Of a stretch of DNA of 64,000 nucleotides, positions 8,247-44,014 are shown one piece after another. The DNA is from Cycas panzhihuaensis (taxonomy: Eukaryota > Plantae > Cycadophyta), in assembly GCA_023213395.1 (NCBI GenBank), contig CM041465.1, positions 229,841,741 to 229,905,740 of the forward strand. The letters are read 5' to 3'. Under the pieces are notes generated by a model that was not told where the DNA came from, ran no database searches, and saw only the letters and a program-made list of their open reading frames with translations. The position numbers were made by a program, and so were the translations under genes. Every line of letters starts with the position of its first letter. The first letter of the stretch is position 1.

Positions 8247-8249
<3 letters not shown>

Positions 8250-8379: not shown

Positions 8380-11300
8380 TTAATGTTTCATCCTTTCAAT
8401 CCTATTTTATCTCTAAAAATTAGGAACTTGCCTTTGCTAAGAGGCTTTGTTAAAATATCTGCAATCTATTCATTCGTTGAACAGTATGTTAAATCAATTT
8501 CTTTGTTTTGCACCTTTTCTCTTAATGAAGTGGTGATGCACTTCAATGTGCTTTGTTCAAGCATGGAGAACTGGATTCTTGGTAAGTTCAATAACACTTT
8601 GATTGTCACAAAATAGGGTGGTTGACTCATTTTGTTGTTGATCTAAGTCTGATAGCAGTTGTCTGAGCCAAACTGCTTCACAAATTGCACTGACCACTGA
8701 CTTGTATTTGAATTTTGTAGATGATAGAGCAATTGTAGGTTGTCTTTTGCTACTCCAAGAGATTGTTGTTGATCCAAGGAAGAAACAATAACCACTTGTT
8801 GATCTTCTTTTCTTTCTGTCTCCAGCCCAGTCTAAGTCACAATATACAATTAGTTTACATGTTCTCAATTTTGGATATGTGAGTTTTAGATTAGTTGTTC
8901 CTTTTAAGTATCTGAGTATTCTTTTTGTTGCTTTCCAATGTCTCACCTTTCAATCCTATATATATTTTGAAACTAGACTTACTGAATATGAGATGTCATA
9001 TCTAGTTGCGATGAGATATATCAAGCTACCTATCAGTTGCCTGTACAATGTTCCATTAATTACAGATTCACCTTCATCTGGAGTGAGATCATAGCCTACT
9101 TCCATATGAGTGATGCAACTGTTGCTTTCTTCCATCTTGAATTTCAATACCAGATTTGCAGATTTTTAATGTATCTAATCTAGGACAAGGAAATTGAATC
9201 TTCCTTTTGACCAACCTCTATCCCTAGATAGTAGTTCAACAGCCCTAGATCCGTCATCTCAAAGCCCTTTTACAACTGAGTCCTTATATTGGCTATTGAC
9301 TCAATATCATTACCTATGAGAATCATATTATCTACATAAATTGTAATGACAGTGATTAGTCCTTGTCTTTTTTTTGGTGTATAGATTAGAGTTAGAGCTG
9401 CACCTACAAAAGCCATTCTGGATGAGATATTTGTCTAACTTTGCATACCAGGCCCTTGGGGCTTGTTTTAGCTCATACAATGCCTTTTTCAGCCTGCAAA
9501 CAAGATTTTCTTTCCCATGCTGGACAAATCCTTCAGGCTATCTCATGTAGATTTCCTCCTCAAGTTCACCGTTTAAGAAGGTGCTTTTTACATCCAACCG
9601 ATAAATTTTCTAGTTGTTCTAAGCTATCGGGGCTATTATTGCTCTTACAGTGTCCAATTTGGCTATTGGTGAGAATGTCTCCTCATAGTCTATTCCAGCA
9701 ATCTAAGTGTATCCTTTGGCTACTAGCTTGGCCTTATATTTGCTTATTTTTCCATTAGCATCTTCCTTTATTTTAAATACCCACTTGCAATTGACCATTG
9801 GTTTTCCTGCAGGTAAATTTACTAGTTCCCAGGTCTGATTTTTAGACATTGACTCCATCTCTTCATTCATTGCAGCTTCCTATTCTTTGTGTCCCTTTGC
9901 CTCTTCAAATGAATGTGGTTCTGTGTTAGTGAATAGTGCTTGATCCCTTTGACTTCTTGTCCTATGTGTATACACATCTCCCTTGACTTCCTCAATGGTC
10001 TTAAGATACCATTTTGGTATCCTTTTTTCCTTCTTTTTTTCTTCTTCTTCAATGATTGTATCTATAGAAGGCAATCCTTCTTCTCCAGCAGTAGAAATTT
10101 CATGAGATCGCGATGCCCTCTCTGAATCATTTGTCTCTATGTCTTCTGAGGTGATTCCAAAGACTTCTTCAGCTAGAGGTTCTACTTGTAAAATTTTCTT
10201 GGGTGCTTCTTCAACTATCTATTGAACTAGGGTGTCCCTTATGAGATCAACTTCATTGAAAACAACATCCCTACTTATATAGACCTTATTTGTTTTAGGA
10301 TCTATACATTTGTAGGCTTTTGAATTTTTACTATAGCCTACCATTATGCATTCTTTGCTTTTAGAGTCTAGTTTTGCTCTCTTTTATTCTGGTATATGGA
10401 CAAAAGCTTGACATCCAAAGACTCTTAGATTACTTATATCAGGTTTGGTTCCATTCCAGGCTTCTTCTAGTGTAATTTATTCCAAGGCCTTTGTAGGACT
10501 TCTATTTATAAGATAACTAGTTGTGCAGACTACTTTAACCCAATAAATTCTTGAGATCTAGCTTTCTTTGATCATGCTACGAGCCATCTCCATGATCGTT
10601 CTGTTCATTCATTCGACAACTCTATTGGACTGTGGTGTGTATAGAGTTGTGAATTGTCAGCGTATTCCATGTATCTTGCAAAAATTCAAAACATCCTTTG
10701 AGATGTATTTGCCTCCACCATCTAATCTGACACATTTTATTTTGGCTCTAGATTCCAGTTCAACTTCAGCTTTAAATTCTTTAAATTTTTCAAAAACTTC
10801 GGATTTGCTCTAAAGAAAATAAATTCAAGTTTTTCTAGAAAAATCATCAATGAATGTCAAAAAATACCTTGCACCATTAATTGAGCAAGGTGTGAGGGCT
10901 CTACATAGATCAGTATGCATCAATTCTAGCTTGCTTTGAGCTTGCCATTCATTTAATTTAAAAGGAAAATGATGTTGTTTCCCGAGCATGCAACTTTTGC
11001 AAATAAGATGTTAAAATGAAATATTTAGAAGACCATTAACCATTTTAAATTTTTGCAACTGCATAAATATGTCTGATGAGATATGCCTATACTTCAAATG
11101 CCATAATTTATTATTATCAACATTGGCTGCAATACATGCCTTTACATTGACAGTCATAGGGTTAGAAAGTAACCTATATAGGTCATTACTTTCTATACCT
11201 TTTGCAATCACAACTCCACTCTTTTTCATGTTTAAATACGAAAATATCCATCTTCATCAAGCACAATCCTCAACTTTTTCTTTCTCAGTTGGGAAACAAA

Positions 11301-12464
11301 AAGGAGATTCTTTTTTAAGCCATGAACAAATAGCAATTTACAATTTTTTGTATACCTCCTTTTATTTTAATTGCTTTGATATTAAGAGGATATTTATCCC
11401 CTAACTCAACAAACTTGTTTGAGGTGTAAGGTTTTAGTAATTCAAACCAGTCCTCTCGTCCGGTCATGTGTCTTGATGCTCTGGAATCAGTGTACCACAC
11501 CTCCTCATCTTCGAGACTTGCAGTGAGTGCAAAAATGAAGACAGTTTCTTCTTCATCTTTGTCATTTGTTCTCGGCTATAGTTTCTTGCAGGGCATTTTC
11601 CTTTTTGAATTTCAACTCTTTTCTGTGGACATTGATATGGATAATGCTCGGTTTATCTACAGTGGTAACAAACATTAAAGGCTCTACAACTACTGGAAAA
11701 GTGCCCTGGTTTTCTATAGTTAAAGCACACTCTGCCTTCTCTGGGGGGAGTGTTGTATCCTCATCCTCAGTTGTCTTGCCATCTCCTGCAAGATGAGCTT
11801 TTGGTATCTGGAGCCCTAGCATGACAGCGAAATTGCCCCCTTCCTCTGGGTCCTAAATGAAGTTTGGTGACAAAGGCATCCTCCATCTTCGTTGTATCTT
11901 CATATTGCTTGTTTCTTTGCTCTTGTCTCAACAACAATCTTGTCAATGTATTAATCTGATCATTATTAGTGATTGTGTTGATTGTAACATCAAATGATTT
12001 CGGGAGCTTGTTTGCTACCATTTCGACAATCTCTTATTCTTCTATTTTGCTCTTGCACTTAACAAATCATTTCTAATTGGAACAACTATATGAAGAAACT
12101 CTGAAATTGTTTCAGTTTCTTTCATGTGTAGCTTAAACAGATCTTCTTTCAAGGCCATGATCCGAGCCCTATTTTTCTGGCCATACATAATTTCAAACAT
12201 TTTTCAAACTTCTAAGGACGAGTTCAAATTTTCAACATAAACAACAAGTGGATCTAAAACGAAGAGTTTTAATGTGATTAATCCTGCATTATCTCTCTCT
12301 TCCCAACTAAGTAAGTCAATGTCATTAGGTTTTGTTTCTAAACTTGTGGCTATCTTCCATGCATTTTTGGCTCTTAGCAATGTTTCTACTTTGATCTTCC
12401 ATATATGACAATTGGAAGCAGTAAGCTTGTCCTAATCAGACAAAGCTAAGACAATGGAAGCCAT
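8380..12464 (-). pseudogene. gag-pol: Copia-M gag-pol, degenerate
   Basis: Fragments WYTDSRASRHMT, WHLKYRH, RHWKATKRILRYLKG and CDNQS in the ORF track. Confidence 0.9.
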
Positions 12465-13962
12465 TCTAAATGTTGAGATCAAGGTCTAAAACCAGAGATA
12501 GTGTTTAGTTGTACAAATGTACAGATTTCTATACGAAAATGAGGGTGTACAGACTGGTAAGAAATGTACTTCAAATTGAAGTACTTCACAAGAGGATTTC
12601 AGACCTATGATTATTTTTTGGAGATGGTTTTCTGTTAGAAGAAAACTGCCAGAAAACTTCAAATGGGCGGCTAGGTTTTTGAGGAAAAATCCTTTTAAGC
12701 CTTCAATAATATTCAACGAAATTGGAATTGATCTCTTTGTAATGCAAAATCAAACAGATTATGAGTGATTTTACTGAAAATCTAGAGAAATTTTTGAAGA
12801 AATCTGAGATTGGAGGTCCAAACCTACACAAATTGAAAAAGGGGTAAAACTCCCTCAAGATGACTTCTAATGACTTTGTGTCTGTTGATAGAATTGTTGT
12901 CTGTATTGAGATTTACCTTTTGGCCAAGTTTCATTGAATTCTGAGCACTTTGATTTTTCACATCTATACGGGTCTGTACTGGTCCATACAATTCCGTACA
13001 AGATTGAATTATGTAGCCTTCTTAATCCTCTGGAGAAATCTAATCTCGTTCTTCTCCTTCTTGATCTTCTAGAGAAATTTGATCTCGTTCTTTCCTTGTA
13101 TTACCTCTAGCCTCTGATTTCTATTTCAAAATGACTCACACAAACTACAAATTCTTCTTGTCAGATAAATAGGCTAACCTACTCTAATACCATGTTGCAA
13201 ATCAGAGAGAAGTAGAAGAATTACTGATGATTTATTATGAGAGATCAACTCTATATATATACAATGACATATTGTAACTGTCATGTATGAGTGACACGTG
13301 GTAGACACTTGTCCTATTATACACAAAGAGGGTTTTACATGACCCTCACTTACACATTCCTAGATGAAACATTGTATTCTAACAAAAGAGGGATGAACAT
13401 GCTTTGGAATCCTAGAGCCTTAGTTGAGTTCCTGGTCAGAGGAATTCTGGAGCCATGGTTGGATTCTTGGAGTTGTTCAACGTCTCGAGGATGCTAGTTA
13501 TTACAGGGCTCGCCACTAGAGCTAAAAAATGCCAAATCAGGCGATGCTAAGAGTTTTAAAAGAGCCCGATTTAGGCACGATTTTATTGATTTTCTATCAG
13601 ATATTCCTCCTCTAGCTAATAATAGTTACACAATATTTTTCAGATATGTATCCAAACTATATAATTAACAAAGCAATTGACATTTTATTTAAAACGAATG
13701 TAATGCGCTAAAAGCAGTTACTCTTCTTCTACATTCACTTGTCTCTTTTAATCAAAAAAACTTATAATAGAATAATGCAATATATAAAGAACTATATTTT
13801 CTATTTTATCTGTAATTTATTGTTATGTCATATTATCAACTGTTGAATAAATCTTGTTGGGAGATAGGCATGCCACAATTATTTACTAACCATGTTTGTA
13901 CGTTTGTGAGGTAGAGGAACAGAAAAACTGCTAAGAACAATTGCAATCAAGGGGAAGAGAAA

Positions 13963-17225: not shown

Positions 17226-18894
17226 AATATGTAAGATGCTATGTACAATGACTAATTATAACTCGATATAAGATTCTAATTACAATGAACATAATTGTCT
17301 ATGATTTTGCAACTAACAAAAAGTGGTGTGTAATGTGAGAGCTTGAAGGAAAATAAATGAAAGAGGAAAGAAAAGACTTTCAAGTAAACTCAAACTACAA
17401 TTACAGTATTTGTTGGATTGTATGCATGATCTCACATGCTTTCAACTGAGAACAAATCAATAAAAGGTATGTACAAAATCATAGAATATTAGAAAATTTT
17501 TCATTCATCAAATAAAAACTGAATGAAATGAGATGTCCAATAATGTACAAGAAACATTCCAATAAAAGTGTAAGCAGATTACACTAGCTCACAAAGTTTA
17601 TATGTATTGCTTCTAGTGAAAAGTATATCACAAGGCCTACACACTCAAAGCCTTTGAACTCAATACCCTATAATTGTTTGGGTCAAATTTGGTTCATACA
17701 TACCTAAAATAGTGGAAAATATGCTAATGTGCAATGCAAGGAATGCTCCAACACATGCTAAGGCAATGAACTATGCTAGAAAAAGAGCTTTCAGGGAATG
17801 CACCAAATGCATGTGACAAAGGGACAAACACAGTCCAAGATGATGATGTCAGCCTTGTAGATACAAACATTGTAATAAAATGTAATGATTAATTATGGGT
17901 CATTATGAAAAGGTGTTGTGTTATGTAAAAAAATGGTTGTGACCATGAGACACAACTATTCCTGTGAAAAGGCATGTATTTTTGTATTTGTGAAGCATTC
18001 TCTCACCATGTTAGGTGTGAAAGCCAAGTATTGTGATCTATGGATGTATGACACTCTCATATGGTGATATTGTTTAATAATATTAGAGTTATGTGGAAAT
18101 ATTGTCATACATGTGAATATGTTACTTTCATATTGTGATGATGATGATATGTTGTCATGATGATGCTTTGATGTTTCTATGAGTTGGGATGAATGTATAT
18201 GGATAGAATTGTGACTATGCAGCCAATATGTTGAGAATAACCCTGTAGAGATTATCCAAAAATGGCCCTTGACAAAAGTGCTTCATGGTATCAGGAAGCA
18301 GTTAAAATTGGTTTCATTGCCTAATTCTATTTGTGGAGGGAGTGAGTTAGAGTTTTGCCTTTCAAAACATATGCCCAAAGGCCAAGGAACCTTGGCTGTC
18401 ATTGTAATGGTAGACTGTAACTAAGCCTTCGACAGCCATAAGGCCTCTCAATGTAGCCTTTGAAGGTGGTCAAGCCACCTAAACAACCTTCACCTACGGG
18501 ACTTTCTAAATCTAGTAGCAAAGGGCAATAAGATGGGCAAATGAGAAAAAAATACAATGGGCAAGAAGGATGACTTCCATAAAAAATGAAAAGATTAAGG
18601 GTTGGGCTATTCACAGGTCTAAAGCAAGGGGAGCACAAACACCCCTTGGACTAGAAAATGAAGGAATTAGAGGACCAATGGTATTAACACTAGTCCTAAT
18701 TGGATTTGACACACTTAGCCTGAAGGTTACAACCTTAGTCTCATAATTATTAACGACATAATAGAAAACCATAGAAAAAGACAGAAACTTCAGATGAGGA
18801 AGTGGAAACCCTAAAAGAAGAGAAAACATCAAAGAAAAAGGATGACACTTGAAAGGGAAAAGATGAAACCCTAGTCAAGGAAGAAGAATTAAGT

Positions 18895-20235: not shown

Positions 20236-21476
20236 TGTTAGAATTTATACACAGATTATAGAATAATCAGTGCTTTATTATGAGAGAGGTTCTCTATATA
20301 TACATTTGAGAAATTGTAACCACCATGTGTCTAACTAACACATGGAAGACACTTGTTTATGTTACATAAAGAGGGGTTTCTACATGACCCTTAACTAATC
20401 CTAGATAAAACATTACATTCTGACACCCTTTCTTAATGTTCTATCTATTAAATCCTATTTATCTCTAAGGACTTGAAATTTGTCCTTGCTGAGTGGTTTT
20501 GTCAATATGTTTGCAACTTGCTCATTTGTTGGGCAGTATGTCAGGTCAATTTCTTTATTCTACACTTTTTCTCAAATGAAGTGGTTACGCACTTCAATGT
20601 GCTTTGTTTGAGCATGAAGAACTGAATTGTTGGTTAGTTTGATGGCACTCTGATTATCTCAAAATAGAGTCGTCAATCCTTCTTGTTGTTGATCTAGATT
20701 TGACAGAAGTTGTCTCAACCAGAATGCTTCACATGAGGCACTAATTGCTGCCTTATAATTTGCTTCAGTGGATGAGAGTGCAATTGTAGATTGTTGCTTA
20801 CTACTCCAGGAGATAGTTGCTGATCCAAGGAAGAAGCAATAACCACTTGTTGATCTTCTCTTCTCTTTGTCTCCTACCTAGTTTGAATCACAGTATCCAA
20901 TTTGTTTGTTTGACATCATTCTTGGATGTGTGAGTTTTAGATCAATGGTTCCTTTCAGGTATCTGAGTATCCTTTTAGCAACTTGCCAGTGTCTCATCTT
21001 CAGTTCTTGCATATATCTAGAGACTAGACTTACTAAATATGAGATATCAGGTCTAGTTGCAGTGAGATTGTTGGGACATATTTTGACACATAGGCCTTGA
21101 GGAAGACGGAATACAGGTTGTATTGACCAAAGGAATGCAAGTGAAATCCGTGACGGAGTACGCACAGGCTAAACAGTTGAAGAAATCAGCATTCGGCACG
21201 TATGACAAAAAGGGTGAACGGCAGTGCGTATCACGTAACGCATCAGAGCGGAATGTAATCGAGCCGAAACGATACGTATGACAAGACGGACCGGTGGAGG
21301 CCCGGAAGGCGCCGTGACGTCACGGACCTAAAGAGACATTAGTTAAGTGTATAACTAATGATTAAAGTGAAAGGGTACCTTGGTAACAAAAAGGTATGGT
21401 TATGACTTTGGGTCATGACCTTTCATCCAAAAGGCATCAAAGGGACATATTTAATGGTGCTTTGAGGACCATTCCA

Positions 21477-21572
21477 ATGTGAGAGCCGAGTGATTCAATC
21501 ATATTGTATACTCTCAAGGGTGAGAGCCGAGTTATTCATTCCTATGTCATGTGCTCGAGGGTGAGAGCCGAG
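21477..21572 (+). repeat. Three 41-bp-period GGGTGAGAGCCGAG boxes in the A 5' LTR (two copies in the 3' LTR, 26130-26183)
   Basis: Boxes at 21479, 21518 and 21559, starting ~25 nt after the TATA-like TATTTAA at 21448-21454. Confidence 0.92.
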
Positions 21573-21962
21573 ATCAAGGGTACGCAAAAGTGCGGATGAC
21601 AAGACGTATGATGTACCGAGTGGAGCATGAGTGCATGATAAGTACCATCTGGTACGCATATGTAATGTAGAGGATCAGATGTCGTTGGAATGCTCCTAAC
21701 GCATTCCATTCGTAAATAAACCGTTGAATTAATAAAAGAAGAGTTATGTGGAAATTGGTGCATTCTTGATGTGTGTTGATGATGTGTCAAGTATGTATTG
21801 AATTACATCATTGCGTGTACCATTCTGTGAATTATATATGGAATTATATGTGGAATATATGTGTATAACCATGTTGACAGTGTCCTAAAACTAGACTATA
21901 GCGCTGTGTAACCTTGACAAGTGCACTGATTCCACAAGGGAGTGGAATCTCCAAGTCAACAT

Positions 21963-21975
21963 TGGTTCCGTTGCC
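21963..21975 (+). promoter_or_regulatory. Primer-binding site complementary to the tRNA-Glu 3' end
   Basis: TGGTTCCGTTGCC is the reverse complement of GGCAACGGAACCA, the plant tRNA-Glu acceptor end as recalled. Confidence 0.88.
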
Positions 21976-22095
21976 TACGTCCATTGAGGAGGGACAGGGC
22001 CTAGGGGTTTCAAAGAGAATGTGTAAAGGGCAGAGGACCCTGGCTGCCATCGTGATGGCGGGTCAGAATTAAGCCACAGCCTGTGGGACCTTCCA

Positions 22096-25000
22096 ATGCC
22101 ACCTAAGAGGCCTTCAAGGTCGGAAGAGCCCCAGAAGGATACTTCACCCAAGGAAAAGGAGACTAGTAGACAAAGGGCACTAAGATGGTCAAAGGAGGCA
22201 AAACTCAGAAGGGCGAGGAGACTAAGTTCGCAAAACAACGAGACTAAGGGACAGTCCGTTGAAGGATCTGAGGCAAGTGGAGCCCAGACACCTCAGGAAG
22301 AGGAAACCCATGGCGAACGCATGGTATTGACACCAACCCCTATCAGAGATGATTTGTTTAGCTTGATTGGAAGGAAGCCTAAAGTGGACGAAAACATAAG
22401 GAAATCTTAACAGAGGGAAGTATACCAATGAGGACACTCAAGGACCTAGGTGATGTTGATAAGAAGGCGGAGGAAGGTCCCTCAAGATATTGGGAAAACA
22501 AGCTAACGAGGCTATTTGAAGATTCGACAGAAAAGGGTTCTGATCAATCTTACATTATGGTAACACCATTGACAATACAAGTTCCAGGTGTAGTGGAACC
22601 TATACATATAAAAACTCCGTTCAAAAATCCGTTGTTTGGAAAGGATACGACAGCAGTAGTCACTCCCAGTACATCCCCAAAGGACGGAGGAGGGGAAAGA
22701 TCACCATCAGGGGGGGAACGGTTGCAATCTCCCAAGATGGACGACCATAGAGATTTCGGAAATTAATCTTCAATGATACTTGACGCAGCAGAGCATGTGT
22801 ATTTGTTTCGTAATCTCATTGATGTTAGAAAACTAACGGAGGCAGATGAGATTAAAGCACGCTACCAGTACATTGAGAGGTGTACCCTTGGCTTGGTATA
22901 AGGAAGCGAACAAAAATGAGCCATGGGCAAAGATGAAGAAAGCGTCAAGAGAGATTCCAAAAGTTTCGCAGAATGAAGTCGGAAATCGCATTAGAAATCG
23001 TGCAGAGGTCGGGAATCATCCTAACTTACATTACTACAATCAACATTATTCCCCCAACTATCATCAATCACACAATTACCCATCATAACATCAACAATTA
23101 CTTCGAGAGGGCTAAATGAGAAGTTGAGCCATGATGCATGCTCATCCACGAAATGATTGAAGAATGGTGAGGAGTTGGGATTGGATTTGGAGATGGAAAT
23201 GGATGCTCGTGGGGACAAGATTCCTTCCGCTAAGATTGGAAGATGAGATTAGAGAGTCGAGACGTAATCAAGATAATCGACCCTTCCGCCAAAGTTGGAG
23301 TAAGGTAAGAGGAGTCTCAATTAGAGGCACCGAGGAAAGAAGTAGCCCTATTGAAAATCGAAATAATCGGGAAGAAGAAGAGACACCAAAGAAGAAAGAG
23401 CACACGGAAGGGTGACCAAGTGGTGCCATATTTGTGAAGAAAACTCACATACCACCCGGAATGTGAATTGAACTTAAAAACAATGTGACGCACCAATGTG
23501 AGAAGTGGTGCCACATATGTGAGGTGGATACCCACACAACTAGGGATTGCTTCTACAATTCCAGAGGAATATCATTCAGAGGTCGAGGTGGGAAGAGGCA
23601 ACCCACCTGCAACGTGTATACAACGAGGGTGCACCGTAACCCTCGAGGAAGAGACAATGATGGGGAGATGCCTCATTCGCCACTGATTCGGACATCGAAG
23701 TCCGAATGCCCGATGAAGCCGGAATACGAACAAAAGCCGTCAGATGTGGTAAATCAGGCCAAGTGACCACAAAATGTAAGATTGCAAGGGTAAAGCCAAA
23801 GCAACAAACTTAATGACGATCGTGTTTAAACAAAAATGTGAAATTGCGTAATAAGCGAAAGAGAAAGTGGATGAAGAATACCCACATCCCCAACCGAATT
23901 GGATCGGTACAAGAAAGCAAAACAAGTGTTGGACGGTTTAATCCAGAGGAAAATATACCGCCAATGGGTAAGCCGTAAACAAAAAATGTGTACGCTCGAA
24001 AAACAAACAAAAGAGCCGGAGAAACTACTAGAAGAATCAACTAAAACCCCAAATGGTGCAAATGGAGGAGTTATTCAAAGGATTACCAGCCGAAGATATT
24101 CCCCGAATGTTGGTACTAATGGAGAATTTAGTAAAGCAGTTGCAGTTGACCATTCCTCTGTCTCAGGTGATTGATTGGATTAAAGGAGGTGTGTTGCAAA
24201 GAGGAATTACCAAAAGTTTGAAACAAATTATACCATCATTCGACATGGATCCAATGGTAACCATGTCCGTATTGGGAGAAACATTTCCTCGAGTTATCGT
24301 TGATGGGGGAGCAGCTGTGAATGTACTGCCCACCTCGACATGGCGGAAGTTGGGAAGCCCGAAGTTGGAAGCAGCGACTTATTCGCTGAAGTTGGCTAAT
24401 GAACTACTAGTACGACCCATGGGGAAACTGACCAACACCAAGGTGGATGTGGCAGGAATTGTCGTAAAGATCGATTTTACGATTGTGGAAACGGAGAAAG
24501 GTGCAACTCCTATCCACTTTATTGGGGAGACCATGGCTATACAAAACCCAATGTCTCCAAAGTTGACAGACGTAACCTTCACCTTGTCAGATGAAGGAAA
24601 TAAAGTAGTATTACCAATGTTGGGGAAGAACTCCATTGAGGTGATACCTGACAACGGATCAAGTACAACCGTTGTAAGGGAAGCAACAACTTCTTCATGT
24701 GACAAAGAAAACCTCTATCATACTGCGGAGAAGCCTACAACATCGACCCATTACCAGAAAGAAGAACCGACCTATTTTGGAGAAATTTACAATTCTTCAG
24801 ATGATGAAAACGAGATGAGATTTGTGGACTATTGGCTACGGGACGATTCTGAAGTCAACCCCTCATCCTATAGATGTAACCTACTTTCTTGGAATGTGAC
24901 CAAAACAGTTGCCACTCCAGAAGATAGAAATCATGGAGAATATGTTGGAAATTATGTAAAGCCCTTTTATGGAAAACCACTAGGTGGAATTTCCCATTTG

Positions 25001-25330
25001 AGACATTGTAGAGAACGTTGGTTAGGAGAAGACCAATTAAGGAATCATAAGAAGAAATCGACAAAGCATACCACACCAAGGAAAAGGCGGAAAAGGACAA
25101 GGCACGACCGCCACGACAAGACATCATATTTCAAGAAGGGTGATCGAGTATGGCGATTCGACAACAAATCCCAAACGACCCAAGGAGAATGGAAGATGCA
25201 TTGGAAAGGCCCATACAGGATTGAGAAAGTGTACCATAATGGCACTATCGAGTTGAAAAACTCTCACGCCACTTATTCCCTGAAATGGTCAAGGGTAGTA
25301 AACTGAAACCCTATATCAACTAGGGTGGAA
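22096..25330 (+). pseudogene. gag: Element A gag, aspartic protease and integrase C-terminal GPY/F module
   Basis: Start MPPKRPSRS, then LRGVPLAWY, KWCHICEVDTHTTRDC, PR VIVDGGAAVNVLP and FKKGDRVW..WKGPYRIEKV. No RT motif lies between them. Confidence 0.88.
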
Positions 25331-28300
25331 AAACTTACCAGCAGGATCAGCTGGTTGTATCATATCAGACAGCATGAAGTTGAGGCAAAATCGAATTGCC
25401 TTGATACCGAACGTGATTCGGCCTGTATGTAACATAAAATACAAAAATTAAAAAGCAGCAAAACAACCGTAACTCATATCATAAGCAATATGGTGAAGCA
25501 TGGAGGAAAGATATACCATCATACGGAAAATCAAGGGAGAGTCAAACAAAACAAAGCACCAATAGATGAGGATTTATTAACCAAGAATGGCGATCGAAAG
25601 AAGGAGCGAGGCAAGCAGGAGCAGCCTTAGAACAGAGAGGGGGAGGAATACCCCAAATTTTGAATTTTTTGTTGAGCAAGGATGCTCAACCCAATCATGT
25701 TGACCCGGGATAGATGTTGGGATATATTTTGACACATAGGCCTTGAGGAAGACAGAATACATGTTGTATTGACCAAAGGAATGCAAGTACGAACCGTACG
25801 GAGGTACGCACGAGGTGAAATAGTGAAGAAATCAGCGTGCAGGTGCGTATGACAGCGTGCAGGCATTGAACGGCACGTATCATATGATACGCACTGTGAG
25901 CGAACGAATCGACGGAAACGGCACGTATGACAATGACGGGACGGGAGGCACAGGAAGGCGCCAGACGTCGTCACGGACCTAAAGAGACATTAGTTAAGTG
26001 TATAACTAATGATTAAAGTGAAAGGGTACCTTGGTAACAAAAAGGTATGGTTATGACTTTGGGTCATGACCTTTCATCCAAAAGGCATCAAAGGGACATA
26101 TTTAATGGTGCTTTGAGGACCATTCCAAAGGTGAGAGCCGAGTTATTCATTCCTATGTCATGTGCTCGAGGGTGAGAGCCGAGATCAAGGGTACGCAAAG
26201 GTGCGTATGACAAGACGTATGATGACCGAGTGGAGCATGAGTGCATGATAAGTACCATCCGGCACGCATATGTAACAGAGGATCAGATGTCACCGAATGC
26301 TCCTAACGCATTCCACTCGTAAATAAACTGTTGAATTAATAAAAGAAGAGTTATGTGGAAATTGGTGCATTCTTGATGTGTGTTGATGATGTCTTTGAAG
26401 TATGTATTGAATTACATATGTGTACCATTCTGTGAATTATATATGGAATTATATGTGGAATATATGTGTATAACCATGTTGACAGTGTCCTAAAACTAGA
26501 CTATAGCGCTGTGTAACCTTGACAAGTGCATTGATTCCACGAAGGGTGTGGAATCTATCAGTCAACAGAGATATATCAATCTACCAATTAACGGTTTGTA
26601 TAATATGCCATCAACTGCAGGTTCCCTTTCATCTAGAGTCAGATCACAATTGGTCTCCATGGGTGTTGCACAATTGTTGCTATTCTCCATTTTGAATTTC
26701 CTCAACAGATTTTTGATGTATTTGCTTTGAGATAACGAGATTGAGTCTTTCTTTTGACTGATTTCAATTCTTAGATAATAATTCAGAAGTCCTAAATCCG
26801 TCATCTCAAAGCCTTTTTCCAATTGAGCTTTAATATTGGCTACTGACTTTGTATCACTTCCTATAAGAATCATGTCATCCACATAAACCACAATTATTGT
26901 GATTCATCCTTGTCTCCTTTTTGCATACAAACTGGAGTCAGAGCTGCACCTGAGAAATCCATTCTGAGTGAGGTATTTGTCCAATTTGGTATACCAGGCT
27001 CTTGGGGATTGCTTTAGCCCATATAATGCCTTTTTCAATTTGCATACAAGATTTTCTTGACCAATTTGAACATACCCTTCTAATTGTTTCATGTAGACTT
27101 CTTCTTCACGTTCACCATTTAGAAAGGCACTTTTCACATCCAACTAGTAGATTTCCAGTTATGTTGAGCTGCTAAAGTAATTGTTGTTCTCACAATGTCC
27201 AATTTTGCTACTGGTGAGAAAGTTTCTTCGTAGTCTATTCCAGTTGTTTGTGTATAGCCCTTGGCTACTAGCCTGGCCTTGTATTTCTCTATCTTGCCAT
27301 TAACGTTTTCCTTTATCTTGTACACCCACTTGCAATTGACTATTGGCTTGCCAACAGGTAGATCAACCAGCTCCCAAGTCTGATTCTTGGAGATTGACTC
27401 CATTTCAGCATCCATTGCAGCTTGCCATTCCTCGTGTCCTTTTGCTTCCTCAAAGGATTGTGGTGCTACGTTGCTGAATAGAACTCAATGCTTTTGGCTT
27501 CTCATCCTGTGAGTGAACACATCCCCTTTGCCTTCTTCAACTATCTTAAGGTGCCATTTTGGTACACTTTTTTCTTTTTTCTTCTTTTCTTTAGTGACTG
27601 AGCCTTTTGAAGACAATTCTTCCTCTTCAGTAGTTGAACTTTCATGTGTTTGTAATGCCCTCTTTGAATCATTAAGTTCTGTATCTTCTGAAGTAACCCC
27701 AGAGACTTCTTCTGTAAGGAGTTCTTCTTGAGATACCCTTTTGGGAGTTTCTTCGATTATTTGATGAATTGAAGTGTCCTTTATGATATCTTCTTCATTA
27801 AAGACAACATCTCTGCTTATATAGATCTTATTTGTTTTAGGATCTATGCATTTATAGGCCTTTGAATTCTCACTGTAGCCTATCACTATGCATTCTATAC
27901 TTTTGGAGTCAAATTTGGACCTCATTTTGTCTAGTATATGAACAAACGCTTGACATCCAAACTTTCTCAGATTACTTACATCTGGTTTGATTCTAGTCCA
28001 TGCTTCTTCTGGAGTAATTTGTTCTAAGGCCTTTGTTAGACTTCTATTTATAAAATAAGCAGTTGTGCTAATTACTTTGGCCCAGTTTTTGAGATCTGTT
28101 CATCTTCGATCATGCTTCGAGTCATCTCCATAATTGTTCTGTACTTGCGTTTAGCAACTCCATTGGATTAAAGGGTGTAACGAGTTGTGAATTGTCTGAG
28201 CATTTCATGTGCCTTGCAGAAATTTAAAAAATATATTGAAATATATTCTCCTCCACCATCTGGCCAGATGGATTTTATTCTTGATTCAAATTCTAATTCA

Positions 28301-30885
28301 ACTTCTACCTTGAATTCTTTAAACTTTTCGATAACTTTAGATTTGTTGTAGAGAAAATAAATCCAAATTTTCCTAGAAAAGTCATCAATAAATGTTAAAA
28401 AATACCTGGCACCATTAATTGAGCAAGGACTAAGAGGTCCACATAGGTCAGTATGTATCAATTCCAACTTATTTTGAGATCACCATTCATTTTTCTTAAA
28501 AGGGTGACGATGTTGTTTTCCAAGCTGACAACTTTTACAAACAAAATGATGAAATGCAATATTTGGAAGACCATCAACCATATGTGATTTTTGCAATTGA
28601 GCTAGTCTATCTGTGGAGATGTGCCCATTCTTCAAATGCCACAATTTATTATTATCAATATTGGCTTCAGCATATGCCTTTACATGCTTATTGGCAACTA
28701 TAGGATTAGAAAGTAGTCTATACAGATCATTACTTTCTATCCCTTTTGCAATTACATCACCATTTTTCTTCGTGTCTAGAATATAACAATGTCCTTCTTC
28801 ATTGAATACCGTCCTCAACTTTTTCTTTCCTAGTTGAGGGATGAACAAAAAATTCTCTTTTAGACTAGGTACAAAAAGTACATTTCTAATTTTCTACATT
28901 GCACCTTTTACTTTAATAGCTATGGTACCTACGCCTTTGATATTCAGAGGATACTTGTCCCCTAATTCAACAGATTTATTTGCGGTGTAGGGTTTTAGTG
29001 ATTCAAACCAGTCCTCTCGCCCCATCATATGCCTTGAAACTTCAGAGTCAATGTAACATACCTCTTCATCCTCAAGACTGGCTGTGAGTCCAGCAATAAA
29101 GGTTATCTCTTCTTCATTTTATGAGCCTACCCTTTGCTATAATTCTCCACAGGTTTTTTCCCTCTCTAGATCTTAGCTTTTCTTTGTTGGCACTGGTAAG
29201 GATAATGTTCGGGTTGTCCACAATGGTAGCAGACATCAAAAGCCCTATAGTTAATCACGAGGATGATTCGAGTGGCCTCATCCTCTATTCTCTTGCCATC
29301 TTCCACGAGATTGACTCCTGCTATCTAGGGTACGGGCACGTCCTCGACCTTGTCCTCTTTCTCTGGGTCCTATATTGAGTTTGGTTACAAACGCATCCTC
29401 AATTTTTGTCTCGTCTTGATTATGCTTGTTCCTTTGCTTTTGTCTTAGAAGTAACCCTGTTAGAGTATCCAAAGATATTGTTTCAATTTGTTCATTGTTG
29501 GTTATGGTATTAACTGTAACATCGAATGCCTTTGTCAATTTACTTGCAACCATTTTAATAATCTCTTGTTCCAAAATATCTACTCTTGCACTTAGTAAAT
29601 CATTTCTAACTAAAATGACTCTATGAATAAATTCTAAGTCTGTTTCTATCTCCTTCATATACAATTTGAACAACTTTTCTTTGAGGGCTATAATTCTGGC
29701 CCTATTTTTTTTATTGTATTTATTGTCAAACATTTTCTAGATTGTAGATGAGGAGTTTAGTTTCTCAACATAGATAAGGAGAGAGTCAGAAACTGAGACT
29801 TTCAAGGTTATTACACTTGCGTTGTCCCTTTCTTCCCAATTTGCCTAGGCAGCACCAGCAACTTCAAGTTTTGATTCCTTCCCAATTGCTATTTGCCAGC
29901 CATTTTTGGCTCTAAGCGGTGTTTCAATCTTAATTTTCCAAACATTATAGTTAGTTTCTGTTAATTTATCTTGCTCAATAAGAGCTAGAATGGATGCAGC
30001 CATGTTTGGACTAATGGACAGTATGATGCAGCCCTGACCATATGGTTGTACAGATTTTCATACAAAAATGCAGGTGTACAAAATTGACTAAAAAATAGCC
30101 CAAATTGTAGATCTCTTTAGGGTGAGTCTGAATATGTAATTATTTTTTCAAGTTGGCTTTTAGTTAGACTGGAAAATGGCCCAAAAGTAGAAAACCAATA
30201 GCTAGGGTTTTGAAAAAAATTGCTTAAAACTTTAAAAATTCTTAATCAAACCCTTTGAATCTGGTATCAATAGAAGCATATTAAAGAGACGAATAGAACT
30301 TGATAGGTTTTACTTGGAATGAAGTCTTGTTTTGGTCAAAATCTTTGATCGAACCTCCAAACCCATGCTACTGTATTTTTGGCAAAACGAGCCCAAAAGC
30401 AGCTTCAAATGCCTTCAATCCTATTCAGAAAAATGTTTCAAACATCAAGATCTACTTGCTGGTCAAATTTCAAAGAATTCTGAGCAATTTTAATTTTTCG
30501 TGTCCGTACAATCATACAGTTATGTACCGTCTGTACACTACCTTCGTTTGTCTCCTATTTCGTTGAAAAACTTCTTCTTCTGTCAAATATCTTCTTTATT
30601 GATGCTTGACAATTGATGTCTAACACAGAAACTTTGTCTTCTTCCAACAGAGACCCTTTCTTAGTCAAGCATGTTGGCCTGCTTTGATACCATATTAGAA
30701 TTCAGACATAGATTGGAAAATAATCAGTGATTTATTATGAGATATGTTCTATATATACATTTAAGAAATTGTAACCACCATGTATCTGACTAACACGTGG
30801 CAAACACTTGTTTATGTTACATAAAGAGGGGTTTTTACATAACCCTTAACTAATTCTAAATAAAACATTATATTCTAACAGGAGG

Positions 30886-33628: not shown

Positions 33629-34072
33629 CGTTGACTTATAGTTTGCTACACTTGTGAAAACCAACACTGGTTAAGGGATCACTAGTTGTTGGTCTAGCTT
33701 AGGATACGGTCAACATGATTCTTTTCCCATTAACTATCATTAAGTTTCTCATGCACACAATGTTATCACACATTCATCCTTAATTCATCACAATATCATC
33801 ATAAATTCCACACAGAAGTACATCAAACATGAATTCACTATACAATCATCATGGTACGCATAAGACACAATATTCCATGTAACTCTTTACTTTATTAAGC
33901 AATATGCTTCATACATTCAGTTCTGGAATGTATCCTGCATACGTTCCAACCATATACACAAGGCTTGTTACATGCGTCTCAACAGGGAATGTATCTGGAA
34001 TGCATCTGTTGGATTCTTAATACATACCACCTTCCTTGGTGTGCTGCCTATCGTGCTACCTCATCAATTGGA

Positions 34073-34291
34073 ATACTTGGCTCTCACCATTGAGAGAATA
34101 ACATATGATTGAATCACTCAACTCTCACCCTTGAGAATATGCCATGGAATAAGTAACTCAGCTCTCACCCTTGAAAGAATGACATAATATTGAATAACTC
34201 GGCTCTCACCCTTGAGAATATGCCATGAAATGAATAAATCATCTCTCACTTTGAAAGAATGACATATATATTAAATCACTTAGCTCTCACC
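34073..34291 (-). repeat. Six-unit ~41-bp array (ACTCGGCTCTCACCCTTGAG core) in the B 3' LTR
   Basis: Units start at about 34073, 34116, 34156, 34197, 34237 and 34278, with alternating spacer types. Confidence 0.92.
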
Positions 34292-34959
34292 ATTGGAATG
34301 GTGAGAAAAGTGCCATTAAATACCCATTCTGATGTCCTTTGGGTGAATGGTTATGACCCATGGTCATAACCATTCCTTTTCATAACACATGTGCCTTTTC
34401 ACTTAACACATGATTAACACTACCAATCCATGTATTCTCTATTCGTACGCCCATACGTACATTTATCCTTGCTATCGTTATCAACTGTGGGCGCATTTGA
34501 GTTTGTTCTGGTCATGCGTACTGTTCTAGTATGTTTTATCTACTAGCGTACCTAAAAAGGTACACACCCTGTCATGCGTTCCAAGGACTGTTCCTAAGCC
34601 CATTCTAGTTATTTCTAGAGTCATTCTAGCCATTTTGGGCCAGTTCCTAGTCATTTATGAGCCATTTTGGGCCTGTTTATGGTTGTTATGAGCCATTCTG
34701 AGCCCGTTTTTTGTCATTTCTAAGCCATTTTGGCCATTTCTGATCATGTTGATCATTTTATTCACCAACATCTATCCCGATCAACAAAAAGGTTCAAGTA
34801 TCCTTGCTCAAAAAATCAAATTTTTGGTGTTGTCTCTTTCTTTAAAATTTTGTGTTCTTCCTCCCCCGCTCTACATCGAGGCCTGCCCCTGTAACCCTGA
34901 CTCCAGGCCTCCATTATTTTTACTTGGTTTTAATAAATCCTCATTTATTGGTACTTAAG

Positions 34960-38743: not shown

Positions 38744-39332
38744 TGGAAGGTCCCCTGGCTATCGGAGGCTTAGTTATAGCCCGCCATCACGACGACGTCC
38801 AAGGTCCTCTATCCTTTGAACATTCTCCCCTGGTGAAAAGTCCTGGCCCAGTCCCTCCTCAATGGACATAGGCAACGGAACCAATGTTGACTTATAGTTT
38901 GCTACACTTGTGAAAACCAACACTTGTCAAGGGATCACTAGTTGTTGGTCTAGCTTAGGATACGGTCAACATGCTTCTTTTCCCATTAACTATCATTAAG
39001 GTTCTCATGCACACAATGTTATCACACATTCATCCTTAATTCATCACAATATCATCATAAATTCCACACAGCAGTACATAAAAGAGCATGTATTCACTAT
39101 ACAATCATCATGGAATGCATAAGACACAATATTCCATGTAACTCTTTACTTTATTAAGCAATATGCCTCATACATTCAATTCTGGAACGTATCCTGCATA
39201 CGTTCTAGCCATATACACAAGGTCTGTTACATGTGTTCCAAATAGGGAATGTATCTAGAATGCATCTGCTAGACTGTTAATCCGTACCACCTTCTTTGGT
39301 GTGTTGCCTATCATGCTACCTCATCAATTGGA

Positions 39333-39550
39333 ATACTTGGCTTTTACCGTTGGGAGAATGACATATGATTGAATGACTCGGCTTTCACCTTTGAAAATAT
39401 GCCATAGAATGAATAACTCAGCTCTCACCCCTAAAAGAATGACATAATATTGAATCACTCAGCTCTCACCCTAAAAAATATGCCATGCAATGAATAAATC
39501 ATCTCTCACCCTTGAAAGAATGACATACTATTGAATCACTCGGCTCTCAC
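39333..39550 (-). repeat. Six-unit ~41-bp array in the B 5' LTR
   Basis: Unit-for-unit counterpart of 34073-34291. Confidence 0.9.
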
Positions 39551-40110
39551 TGCTGGAATGGTGAGAAAGTGCCATTAAATACCCATTTTGGTGTCTTTTG
39601 GGTGAATGGTTATGACCCATGGTTATAACCATTCCTTTTCATAACACATATACCTTTTCACTTAACACATAATTAACAATACCAATCCATGTATTCTCTG
39701 TCTGTACGTTCATACATACATATATCCTTGTTGTCGTCATCAATTCTGAGAGCATTTGAGTTCGTTCTAGTCATGCGTACTGTTCTGGTATGTTTCGTTT
39801 GCTAGCATACCTGAAAAGGTACGCACCCTACCATGGGTTCCAGGGACCATTCTTGAGCCCATTCTAGTCATTTTTGGAGCTGTTCTAGGCTAGTTTTTGA
39901 TTATTTATGAGCCATCCTGACCATTCTGGCCTTGTTTATGGTTGTTTCTGAATCGTTTTGGCCATTCTGGGCCCGTTTCTGGTCATTTGTGAGTCGTTTT
40001 GGCTGTTTCTAACTGTGTTGATCATTTAATTTGCCAACATCTCTCCCGAGTCAACAAAAAAGGTTGAGCATCCTTGCTCAAAAAATCAAAATTTTGGTGT
40101 TGTCTCTTTC

Positions 40111-40916
40111 TTCAAGAATGTATTTGTGTGGTCTTATGAAGACCTAAAGGGCATTCCCCTAGAGATTGGGATGTACCATATAGATTTAATTGAAGAGGCA
40201 AAGTCAATTAAGTAGACACCATACTGCATGAACACCAAATACAAGGAAAAAGTAAAAACAGAATTAGATAAGATGTTAGAAGAAGGTTCTTTATGAGGTT
40301 GACTATAGCAATTGGGTGACCCTAGAGGTAGCGGTGCCCAAAAGAAATAGGAAGATCAGAGTGTTTGTTGACTATTGGCAGCTAAATAAAGTCACAAAGA
40401 AGAATCCCTTCCCAATTTTGTATATAGAGGATGTACAAGCGATGGTTGGGGTCAATGAAGTATGTTCATTTACAGATGGGTTCAGTGGGTATAACCAGGT
40501 GAGTATAATTTCAAAGGATGAAAAAAGACCACTTTTGCAATAAAATGGGGGACATATGCCTACAAGATTATACCTTTCAAATTAACAAATGCCCCAACCA
40601 TCTTTCAATGCATTATGCTTACTATTTTCAAAGAAATAATTAGAGACATAGTAGTAGTTTTTTTGGATGACTGGACTTGATATGGTATAATAAAAAACCA
40701 TACAAAAAATCTACATGAAATGTTGCAAACTTGTTGAGAAAATAACCTTTGCATAAATCCAAAAAAGTATACATTTCTTGTCCCTTTTGGTAATCTGTCC
40801 AGACACATTATCAATAAGGACGGGTTACCGACAAATCCCACTAAAGTATGTACAGTCCTACATTCCCCAACCCTAGCGACACACATGCAATTAAAAGGAT
40901 TCGTAGGATTGTTAGG
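40111..40916 (+). pseudogene. pol: Element C reverse transcriptase (non-chromovirus Gypsy type)
   Basis: FKNVFVWSYEDLKGIP, IRVFVDYWQLNKVTKKNPFP, SFTDGFSGYNQV and VFLDD. Confidence 0.88.
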
Positions 40917-42715: not shown

Positions 42716-43189
42716 TTGTCCTATGGCATGTTAAATGGCCATCTCTTTTGAAACATGCCCCTGTCGTTTGTCTCATATTGGTGGATTTTTTAAGAAGATT
42801 TGAATTATTTTTGACCTAGCAATTCGTATTACAATAGCAGGTTTCTACAAAGGAAATGATTTGTTTTTGGCCTGGCAATTGGTGTTGCAATGAGGTGATT
42901 AAAAGTTTGGAGCATTGGGCATGGAGGCCTTGTGGACATCCAACAATAGAAGTGGACGTGTTTTGTCTTTGCCTAGATTCACTAGATGGGATTTTCTAGT
43001 GTTGGACTCCTATTGAACTGCTTGTGGCATTTAGAACTTGTTATGAGTTCTGGTGCTTAAAATATGATTGATTTTTAGTTGTAATGTGTAGGAAAATGAT
43101 GCTTCTATATTGTTGGTTGATGTTATTCTACTTGGGAAGGTTCATCAGGTTGTGGAGAATACCTATCACAATCTCTCAAAAAACAACAT

Positions 43190-44014
43190 TGTTGACTTAT
43201 AGATTTCACACCCCTTATGAGATCAATGCACTTGTCAAGGTAACATAGGTTGTAATCTAGTTTAGGATACAGTCAACATAATCATCACATAGATTTATTC
43301 ACCATTCCACACAGTTATATCACAGTTTACACACAGCAGTACAGTAATCAGCACATATTCAGCAATTCATCCTCATTACAAGCATAGAATCCATATTTCC
43401 ATGTAACTCTTTATTTTATTAAGCAATAAGTTCTTATACAAAAGGTGCTGGAATGCATTCCCTGTGCATTCCAGCCACATACACTGTCACTGTCACATGC
43501 GTACCCAGAAGGTACCCATCAATACACATGGCTTCAAGCTGTTGTCATACGTACTGGTCTCCGTACCAATGTGTCTGAATACTTGGCTCTCACCCTAGCC
43601 AGATGGTCCTTGTGAAATCACTTAAATATGCCTTCTTGGTGTCCTTTGACTGAAGGGTTATGATTGTTTGTCATAACCGTACCCTTCCAGTCACAAACGT
43701 ACCTTTTGCTAACCATTGGTTAATCTTCTTAACCATTGTCTTAATCCATCCGTACGTACGTCTGACATCATCCCAGGTATCCTTTCGTCAAGTTCTGTCA
43801 TGCGTACCTTTACCATCTGCTTGCATTCTGCCGGAGGTACATATCTGTGTTGCGTAGCTTCTCAGGTACGCACCTGTCATACGTACCAAGAATGTTGACT
43901 TTTCCGTCTTTTTGCTGCATGTGTACCTCCGTACAGTCCGTACCTGTACATCCAAGGTTACCTAGTCTCTCTCTGGTCTCCTCATAGCCTAGCGTGTCAC
44001 AATATGCCCCAACA
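43190..44014 (-). mobile_element. Solo LTR of the tRNA-Glu Gypsy family
   Basis: TGTTGAC...CCAACA with TSD AACAT at 43185-43189 and 44015-44019. Homologous to the A and B LTRs, with no PBS or PPT. Confidence 0.92.

What the first reader, a model, noticed from the sequence alone, without database searches (positions are those of the whole stretch)
21477..21572. Tandem LTR array complementary to the anticodon arm of the element's own primer tRNA-Glu(CUC)
Seen: all LTRs of this family that span the region carry GGGTGAGAGCCGAGT-like boxes; in A, B and the solo LTR they start ~25 nt after a TATA-like box and recur at ~41-bp spacing where multi-copy. Copy numbers are A 5' x3, A 3' x2 (26130-26183), B x6 twice (34073-34291, 39333-39550), solo LTR x1 (43579-43595) and C x1 degenerate (18017-18031). 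Knowledge (recalled): plant tRNA-Glu(CUC) reads ..GGATACTCGGCTCTCACCCGAGAGAC.., so the box is a 15-nt exact complement of the anticodon stem-loop. It extends to 20 nt with a recurring 2-nt bulge (CTCTC-aa-GGGTGAGAGCCGAGT, 21511-21532). The same elements have a tRNA-Glu PBS. The core is conserved between A and B while the spacers diverge. Inference: the boxes lie in R, so they occur at both RNA ends. They could tether or unfold the primer and bridge minus-strand transfer, as with the Ty3 bipartite PBS and the HIV-1 U3 tRNA-Lys3-complementary motif. Alternatively they could act as an expandable sponge for tRNA or tRNA fragments.
Basis: partly seen in the sequence, partly recalled or inferred. 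Interest (0 to 1): 0.92.

Follow-up and report, generated by a model that had tools for sequence, protein, structure and literature searches.

The report
LTR repeats complementary to primer tRNA-Glu
A family of plant Gypsy-type retrotransposons carries, just after its predicted transcription start, one to six tandem copies of a 15-20 nt box that is the exact complement of the anticodon arm of tRNA-Glu(CUC), the same tRNA that primes its reverse transcription. This suggests an extra, untested primer-contact system.

Summary
The box GGGTGAGAGCCGAGT occurs 14 times in the window (0.04 expected), only in LTRs of related elements A, B, a solo LTR and, degenerate, C. It is always on the element's sense strand, in 41-bp tandem units, with the stated copy numbers.

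The recalled tRNA sequence is real. 67 tRNA-Glu(ctc) genes from metagenome contigs carry the exact complement, and 25 of them, on low-GC contigs, also have the 3' end that matches the element's PBS. Shuffled tRNAs reach at most 12 nt and other tRNAs at most 10.

A second block in U5 complements tRNA positions about 4-29. A TATTTAA is invariant in A, B and the solo LTR, 31-35 nt upstream of the first box. A poly(A)-signal island is invariant in all six LTRs. Both place the array at the start of R, but this is inferred, with no RNA evidence.

One claim is overstated. Spacers are also conserved between A and B (0.80 against 0.89-0.91 for the box).

Best reading (about 0.4): auxiliary primer-tRNA binding sites, a multipartite PBS like Ty1, Ty3 or Drosophila Gypsy but arrayed in R. 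Main rival: a captured reverse-copied tRNA piece kept for other reasons.

First readers noted the same motif in at least eight other windows of this genome, all unchecked.

The parts
21070..21961 (+). Element A 5' LTR (TG..CA, TSD GAGAT)
   Evidence: Self-BLAST pairs 21065-21961 with 25712-26567. Ends and TSD were read.
21448..21454 (+). TATTTAA, predicted TATA box 31 nt upstream of the first box core
   Evidence: Invariant in A5, A3, B5, B3 and the solo LTR, 31-35 nt before the first GTGAGAG. C has a decayed copy at the same spacing.
21477..21573 (+). The finding: three 41-bp units, each with a box complementary to tRNA-Glu(CUC) raw positions 27-41 (up to 46 with a 2-nt bulge)
21729..21755 (+). 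Conserved poly(A)-signal island (TTAATAAA..AGAGTTAyrTGGAA), predicted end of R shortly downstream
   Evidence: Invariant core in all six LTRs, including C.
21879..21898 (+). U5 block complementary to tRNA-Glu positions about 8-29 (D arm), 65 nt upstream of the PBS
   Evidence: Local alignment to the tRNA complement was matched by 1 of 1000 shuffles for the 5' LTR and 0 of 1000 for the 3' LTR. The longer solo-LTR version (positions 4-29) was matched by 0 of 1000. Alignment A1.
21963..21975 (+). PBS of A, 13 nt complementary to the 3' end (with CCA) of tRNA-Glu
25716..26567 (+). Element A 3' LTR, with a 2-box array at 26129-26184 and a U5 block at 26484-26503
38886..40119 (-). Element B 5' LTR, with a 6-unit array at 39335-39552, a U5 block at 38946-38963 and a PBS at 38871-38883
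33630..34848 (-). Element B 3' LTR, with a 6-unit array at 34075-34292 (81-bp two-unit higher-order repeat) and a U5 block at 33690-33707
43189..44014 (-). Solo LTR (TSD ATGTT), with a single box at 43581-43595, TATTTAA at 43622-43628 and a U5 block at about 43248-43272
18017..18031 (+). Degenerate single box in the 5' LTR of distant relative C (decayed PBS at 18309-18321)

Best explanation
The boxes are auxiliary binding sites for the element's own primer, tRNA-Glu(CUC). Three segments of the genomic RNA complement non-overlapping parts of one tRNA: the canonical 13-nt PBS (tRNA 3' end), a U5 block of about 22 nt (acceptor 5' strand and D arm), and the boxes of 15-20 nt (anticodon arm). Together they would form a multipartite primer-binding system.

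The array starts at the predicted transcription start and lies upstream of the conserved poly(A) signal, so it should be in R and present at both ends of the RNA. The inferred mechanism has two steps. First, the PBS-bound tRNA is opened further by pairing with U5 and a box, probably with help from the Gag nucleocapsid. Second, after minus-strand strong-stop synthesis, the anticodon arm can hold a box in the 3' R. That would bring the acceptor end next to the nascent DNA, whose 3' end is complementary to the same array. Tandem copies would let the tRNA and the nascent DNA bind side by side. They also explain copy-number drift by out-of-register pairing or slippage.

Shown here: the complementarity, its specificity, its position relative to conserved signals, and its retention in four diverged lineages. 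Inferred: transcription of the boxes, actual tRNA binding, and any effect on priming or strand transfer. The blocks probably arose by capture of a reverse-copied primer tRNA, since 15-22 nt is too long to arise stepwise.
For: - The box is an exact 15-nt complement of tRNA-Glu(ctc) genes. 67 of the ARAGORN-called genes in metagenome loci carry it in sense. 25 loci with GC 0.29-0.42 carry the isodecoder whose 3' end also matches the PBS.
- Chance is excluded. 2000 shuffled tRNAs reach at most 12 nt against LTR A, and 65 other tRNAs reach at most 10 nt.
- The predicted co-folding gain is -17.7 to -22.8 kcal/mol for tRNA-Glu, against a mean of -4.3 for 61 other tRNAs.
- There is an independent second block in U5 (0-1 of 1000 shuffles in A and the solo LTR). 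No other tRNA complement occurs elsewhere in the LTRs.
- The in-silico co-fold of the A leader pairs one tRNA with box 2 (18 bp) and the U5 block (21 bp) at once.
- The TATA-to-box spacing of about 31 nt and the poly(A) island are conserved in A, B, the solo LTR and C.
- The array and the U5/PBS region are the only LTR parts alignable between A and B. They are also the LTR bins most covered by family contigs from four other organisms.
- The box is the best-conserved 15-nt window of the unit.
Against: - There is no RNA evidence. TSS, poly(A) site and expression are unknown.
- Spacers are nearly as conserved as boxes (0.80 against 0.89-0.91), so the constraint may act on the whole unit.
- A fixed TATA-to-box distance is also what a core-promoter or initiator element would show.
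- Box and U5 block are collinear and contiguous in the tRNA complement, as expected for a split captured relic.
- In Drosophila Gypsy the second site was dispensable for cDNA synthesis (PMC1635307).
- Pairing requires melting the anticodon stem of a folded, modified tRNA.
- In single-box LTRs the tRNA and the strong-stop DNA would compete for the same site.
- The host's own tRNA-Glu gene was not examined, and the evidence comes from one window.
Confidence: 0.4

Rival explanations
1. Captured relic put to another use. A reverse-copied piece of the primer tRNA (complement of positions about 46 to 4) was once incorporated into the LTR by RT reading into or switching onto the tRNA during plus-strand synthesis. 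It was later split, and its 5' part was amplified by slippage. The 41-bp units are now kept because they serve as TSS-proximal promoter or leader sequence, or as R homology for strand transfer. Pairing with tRNA plays no role.
For: - The orientation is what plus-strand copying of a tRNA gives, the same as the PBS.
- Box and U5 block are contiguous in the tRNA complement and lie in the same order.
- In the solo LTR the match runs on past the box into the D-arm complement (20 of 23, read).
- 15-22 nt blocks are too long for stepwise origin.
- Whole units, not only boxes, are conserved.
- The TATA-to-box spacing is constant.
- Each spacer ends in a pyrimidine patch plus CA, resembling plant core-promoter features (the resemblance is from my own knowledge).
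- First-reader notes report whole reverse-copied tRNA-Glu in other copies of this genome (s1-824870, unchecked).
- Kojima notes that many LTRs contain tRNA-like pieces (PMC10886601).
Against: - It requires that two separate tRNA-derived blocks both became useful for unrelated reasons in four diverged lineages, while the rest of the LTR diverged beyond alignment.
- No known mechanism places a tRNA complement in R or U5, upstream of the PBS.
- The box is still the best-conserved window of the unit.
Confidence: 0.3
2. Neutral hitch-hiker. The tRNA-complementary tandem repeat has no function. It persists because the lineages are related, and it expands and contracts by replication slippage.
For: - Copy number varies freely from 1 to 6, and between the two LTRs of A (3 against 2).
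- Boxes in B decay by ordinary CpG transitions.
- Contigs from other genomes show further copy-number variants (tables 5 and 5c).
Against: - The array and the U5 block are conserved islands in otherwise unalignable LTRs.
- The two spacer types differ by about 35% while their boxes are identical in A. The chance of that is about 0.002 if boxes drifted like spacers (my arithmetic).
- The feature is retained in the distant relative C.
Confidence: 0.15
3. Interaction with tRNA fragments. The boxes and the U5 block are either targets of host tRNA-Glu-derived small RNAs that silence the element, or a decoy that soaks them up.
For: - 18-26 nt tRFs target Gypsy-type TE transcripts in plant pollen (PMC5605234).
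- The U5 block matches the region that 5' tRFs and 5' halves cover.
- Multi-copy sites resemble sponge architecture.
Against: - The boxes span the anticodon loop, which is where tRNA halves are cut. No common tRF class covers positions 27-46 intact (my own knowledge).
- An element gains nothing from conserving a silencing target.
- No small-RNA data could be consulted.
Confidence: 0.1

Closest known systems
Ty3 bipartite PBS (S. cerevisiae; PMC5371799)
   Same: A canonical 5' PBS is combined with a distant second segment complementary to other arms of the same primer tRNA. That segment is present at the 3' end of the genomic RNA, so one tRNA can link the two RNA ends.
   Different: In Ty3 the second segment is a single site in U3, pairs with the T-psi-C and D arms of tRNAiMet, and has been shown experimentally. 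Here the sites are tandem, predicted in R (both ends), pair with the anticodon arm of tRNA-Glu, are 15-20 nt long, and are untested.
Drosophila Gypsy 5' and 3' tRNA-Lys,2 binding sites (PMC1635307)
   Same: [quoted passage not shown] The tRNA bridges 5' and 3' RNAs in vitro.
   Different: It is a single copy outside R, shorter, and dispensable for cDNA synthesis. There is no U5 block.
Ty1 extended PBS (boxes 0, 1 and 2.1) and retroviral U5-tRNA contacts (HIV-1 A-rich loop and PAS, RSV U5 with T-psi-C; cited in PMC5371799, otherwise my own knowledge)
   Same: Extra short complementarities near the PBS unfold the primer tRNA and regulate initiation. The U5 block here resembles these.
   Different: Those segments are 6-12 nt and single-copy. 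The Ty1 boxes lie downstream of the PBS. None is a tandem array at the TSS.
HIV-1 U3 motif complementary to the tRNA-Lys3 anticodon stem (proposed aid to first strand transfer; my own knowledge, not re-read here)
   Same: Complementarity to the primer's anticodon arm at the acceptor end of the genome, proposed to help minus-strand transfer.
   Different: It is 9 nt, single-copy, in U3 and in a retrovirus.
Tandem repeats in plant LTRs (U3 enhancer repeats of Tnt1 or Tto1 type; my own knowledge) and Helenus/Cassandra small-RNA-derived LTRs (PMC10886601)
   Same: Tandem or small-RNA-related sequence inside an LTR, with variable copy number.
   Different: Enhancer repeats lie upstream of the TATA, whereas these lie downstream. 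Helenus carries a sense tRNA-like unit with Pol III A and B boxes. Here only the antisense anticodon and D-arm parts are present, with no B box.

Membership tests
Multipartite or extended primer-binding site (Ty1, Ty3, Gypsy type) | Canonical PBS complementary to the tRNA 3' end, directly after the 5' LTR | tested here: met
   13-nt exact match one base after the ..CA end of the LTR in A and B, and a decayed copy in C.
Multipartite or extended primer-binding site (Ty1, Ty3, Gypsy type) | Further genomic segments complementary to other parts of the same tRNA, beyond chance | tested here: met
   Boxes against the anticodon arm: 15 nt, with shuffles reaching at most 12. U5 block against the D arm and 5' strand: 0-1 of 1000 shuffles. 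Other tRNAs reach at most 10 nt.
Multipartite or extended primer-binding site (Ty1, Ty3, Gypsy type) | The segments lie in the transcribed genomic RNA | tested here: inconclusive
   Conserved TATA 31-35 nt upstream and a conserved AATAAA island downstream predict R. No RNA data were available.
Multipartite or extended primer-binding site (Ty1, Ty3, Gypsy type) | tRNA shown to anneal to the segments and to affect initiation or strand transfer | not testable with these tools
   Only in-silico co-folding could be done.
U3 enhancer tandem repeats of plant LTRs | Repeats located upstream of the TATA box in U3 | tested here: not met
   The array begins 31-35 nt downstream of the start of the conserved TATTTAA. 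A different dispersed motif (ACGTATGACA type, 12 hits against 0.23 expected) occupies U3.
Small-RNA-derived LTRs (Helenus / TRIMp3) | Sense tRNA-like unit with Pol III A and B boxes in the LTR | tested here: not met
   ARAGORN finds no tRNA in the window. Only antisense pieces of the anticodon and D arms are present, with no T-arm or B-box complement.
Half-tRNA PBS (copia, Ty5, Bianca type) | PBS complementary to the anticodon stem-loop, placed directly 3' of the 5' LTR | tested here: not met
   The boxes lie 390-480 nt inside the LTR, and a normal 3'-end PBS is present.

The most novel reading that the evidence does not exclude
A plant Gypsy lineage unfolds about two thirds of its primer tRNA on the genomic RNA through three blocks: PBS, U5 block and R boxes. 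The tandem boxes at the very start of R act as a tRNA-mediated clamp between the two RNA ends for minus-strand transfer, and their copy number is tuned by out-of-register transfer. This would be the first multipartite PBS described in plants and the first one arrayed in R.
Probability: 0.25. Interest if true: 0.8.

Novelty: new variant of a known kind. Interest (0 to 1): 0.62.

Why it matters
Extended contacts between primer tRNA and genomic RNA are known from yeast Ty1 and Ty3, Drosophila Gypsy and retroviruses. My searches found no description of them for plant LTR retrotransposons, which make up most of many plant genomes. The large PBS survey of plant elements does not mention tRNA-Glu in its main text (PMC6317226).

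A long, arrayed complement to the primer's anticodon arm, next to a D-arm complement, gives a clear sequence-defined hypothesis for how a non-autonomous Gypsy family secures its primer and its first strand transfer. It can be tested with simple annealing and strand-transfer assays. Even if it proves to be only a relic, it documents RT-mediated capture of primer tRNA into LTRs.

Tried and rejected
- The metagenome loci holding the 15-mer contain tRNA-Glu genes and chance bacterial hits, but no relatives of the LTR family and no tRNA-Glu PBS.
- The two-box pattern found nothing in viral contigs. In genome contigs it found only unrelated bacterial simple repeats.
- A full-text search for the tRNA anticodon-arm string found no paper.
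- The look-up of sequencing runs and read laying gave only short, genomic-like contigs from coded organisms. There were no RNA holders and no raw reads, so no TSS, poly(A) or expression evidence.
- Pfam found no domains in ORFs of B and C, so the lineage could not be named. A has only a protease plus an integrase-tail-like C-terminus.
- RNAduplex on long sequences was uninformative, with shuffles nearly as good. It was replaced by co-fold gain.
- A whole-LTR alignment misaligns arrays of different copy number. It was replaced by unit alignment.
- I looked for a PBS or T-arm complement upstream of the array, which a whole-tRNA relic would leave. It was not significant.
- The ideas of a half-tRNA PBS, a Helenus-type LTR and a U3 enhancer repeat were each rejected on position or orientation (see Membership tests).
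- A 9-nt T-loop complement in the U3 of B and 12-mers at 32867 and elsewhere are at chance level.

Full report
**1. What is there**

The window holds a nest of LTR retrotransposons.

- **Element A** (21070-26567, plus strand) has LTRs at 21070-21961 and 25716-26567, TG..CA ends and a 5-bp target duplication GAGAT. It sits inside another element. Its internal part encodes only a protease-containing ORF with an integrase-tail-like C-terminus, so it is non-autonomous.
- **Element B** lies on the minus strand, with LTRs at 33630-34848 and 38886-40119.
- **A solo LTR** of the same family lies at 43189-44014 (minus strand, target duplication ATGTT).
- **Element C**, an older and more distant relative, has its 5' LTR ending near 18307.

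A and B have the exact PBS TGGTTCCGTTGCC one base after the LTR. C has a decayed copy.

**2.

GGGTGAGAGCCGAGT occurs 14 times at up to 2 mismatches, against 0.04 expected. All hits are in these LTRs and always on the element's sense strand. Tandem Repeats Finder reports period 40-41, and in B a higher-order period of 81.

Some units extend the match to 20 nt, with CTCTC and a 2-nt AA bulge before the box.

**3. Is the tRNA match real?**

No tRNA gene is in the window, and the host genome could not be reached. I therefore scanned metagenome contigs for the 15-mer and ran ARAGORN on the 120 loci returned.

- 67 matches lie inside tRNA-Glu(ctc) genes in sense orientation, for example L001:9766-9838:-.
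- The other matches are chance hits in GC-rich bacterial DNA.
- 25 loci of plant-like GC content (0.29-0.42) carry the isodecoder whose 3' end, with CCA added, is also the exact complement of the element's PBS.

So the box complements raw positions 27-41 of this tRNA: position 26, the 5' strand of the anticodon stem, the whole loop and two bases of the 3' strand.

Controls:
- 2000 shuffles of the tRNA give at most 12 nt of exact complementarity to LTR A.
- 65 other distinct tRNAs give at most 10 nt.
- The predicted gain on co-folding with the array is -17.7 to -22.8 kcal/mol for tRNA-Glu, against a mean of -4.3 for 61 other tRNAs.

**4. A second block**

- A carries a 20-nt block at 21879-21898.
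- The solo LTR carries a 23-nt block. It complements tRNA positions about 4-29, with a 3-nt gap in the D loop.
- Only 0-1 of 1000 shuffles reach these scores. In the more decayed B the figure is 70-74 of 1000.

Box, U5 block and PBS therefore cover tRNA positions 27-46, 4-29 and 64-76. In a co-fold of the predicted A leader with the tRNA, box 2 (18 bp) and the U5 block (21 bp) pair with one tRNA at the same time. This is in silico only.

**5. Where the boxes sit in the LTR**

- A TATTTAA is invariant in all five LTRs of A, B and the solo copy. It starts 31-35 nt before the first GTGAGAG. C keeps the same spacing with a decayed TATA.
- About 40-250 nt after the array lies an island, TTAATAAA..AGAGTTAyrTGGAA, that is invariant in all six LTRs.

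These signals predict that transcription starts at or just before the first box and that polyadenylation occurs after the array. That puts the array at the 5' end of R. This is inference: the available sequencing runs are short genomic-like contigs with no RNA evidence.

The same contigs do show two things. The array bin and the U5/PBS bin attract far more family contigs from four other organisms than the LTR segment between them. Other copies also have additional units, seen as joints that go back within the array.

Between A and B, only the TATA-plus-array region and the U5-PBS-leader region are alignable by BLAST.

**6. Conservation of box against spacer**

The units alternate between two spacer types, both shared by A and B. 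The type-1 spacer is 23/26 identical between A and B.

In an alignment of 13 complete units, mean column conservation is 0.89 for the box (0.91 without its CpG) and 0.80 for the spacer. The box is the best 15-nt window, but not by much. The two spacer types differ by about 35% while their boxes are identical in A, which would be unlikely (about 0.002) if boxes drifted like spacers. Most box changes in B are CpG transitions, which is ordinary decay of dead copies.

**7. Interpretation**

The statistics exclude coincidence. The cognate primer tRNA is complemented twice more in the LTR, in four diverged lineages, inside conserved islands.

- **Favoured reading (0.4).** These are auxiliary primer-binding segments, a multipartite PBS. 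Their position in R would allow the primer tRNA to bridge the two RNA ends at minus-strand transfer.
- **Main rival (0.3).** A reverse-copied piece of the primer tRNA was captured once and split, and is now retained for TSS-proximal or R functions unrelated to tRNA pairing. Three things favour this: the two blocks are contiguous and collinear in the tRNA complement, the whole 41-bp unit is conserved, and the TATA-to-box spacing is constant.
- **Neutral persistence (0.15) and interplay with tRNA fragments (0.1)** are less likely.

Origin by capture and present function in priming are compatible.

**8. Comparison with known systems**

- The Ty3 bipartite PBS and the Ty1 extended PBS (PMC5371799).
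- Retroviral U5 and U3 contacts with the tRNA (my own knowledge).

This case differs in four ways: the sites are tandem, they are predicted in R, they are 15-20 nt long, and they occur in a plant Gypsy family primed by tRNA-Glu. That primer is not listed among the frequent ones in the plant survey (PMC6317226).

It is not a Helenus-type tRNA-derived LTR (PMC10886601), not a half-tRNA PBS, and not a U3 enhancer repeat. The reasons are in Membership tests.

**9. Earlier notes of this scan**

First readers noted the same kind of motif in at least eight other windows of this genome. One note reports a whole reverse-copied tRNA-Glu. None of these was checked, and I could not read those windows. They suggest the feature is family-wide but are not independent evidence.

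**10. Limits**

- No host tRNA gene, transcript data or family members outside the window could be examined.

Noticed in passing
window 21879-21898, 26484-26503, 38946-38963, 33690-33707, 43248-43272: A U5 block complementary to the 5' strand and D arm of the same tRNA-Glu, 65 nt upstream of the PBS, conserved in A, B and the solo LTR. This is a separate first-reader note, s1-819457.
   Followed up: partly
window 21196-21283, 25843-25932, 26201, 34510-34581, 39769, 43543-43886: A dispersed ACGTATGACA-type motif (12 hits against 0.23 expected), mostly in U3 of the same LTRs. It is a likelier candidate for transcription-factor sites than the tRNA boxes.
   Followed up: partly
window 34075-34292 and 39335-39552: The B arrays are built of 81-bp two-unit repeats, with two alternating spacer types. 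The same two types occur in A, so the two-unit repeat predates the split of A and B.
   Followed up: yes
window 20238-30880: Element A is a nested insertion (TSD GAGAT) in another LTR element. Relatives of that host element lie at 8237-13385 and at about 56800-59280.
   Followed up: no
window 20170 and 42931 (+): 12-mers identical to the 3' end of a tRNA-His(gtg). They may be PBSs of minus-strand elements using another primer, or chance matches.
   Followed up: no
L080:3226-3341: A GC-rich (0.65) metagenome contig carries the same 15-mer three times in a tandem repeat of about 33-34 bp. It is unrelated to the plant LTR family. Origin unknown.
   Followed up: no
window 24053-25306 (+): The only long ORF of A joins a retroviral-type aspartic protease to a C-terminus with a GPY-like integrase tail and no RT or RNase H. 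This fits a deletion-derived non-autonomous Gypsy element (compare note s1-819627).
   Followed up: partly
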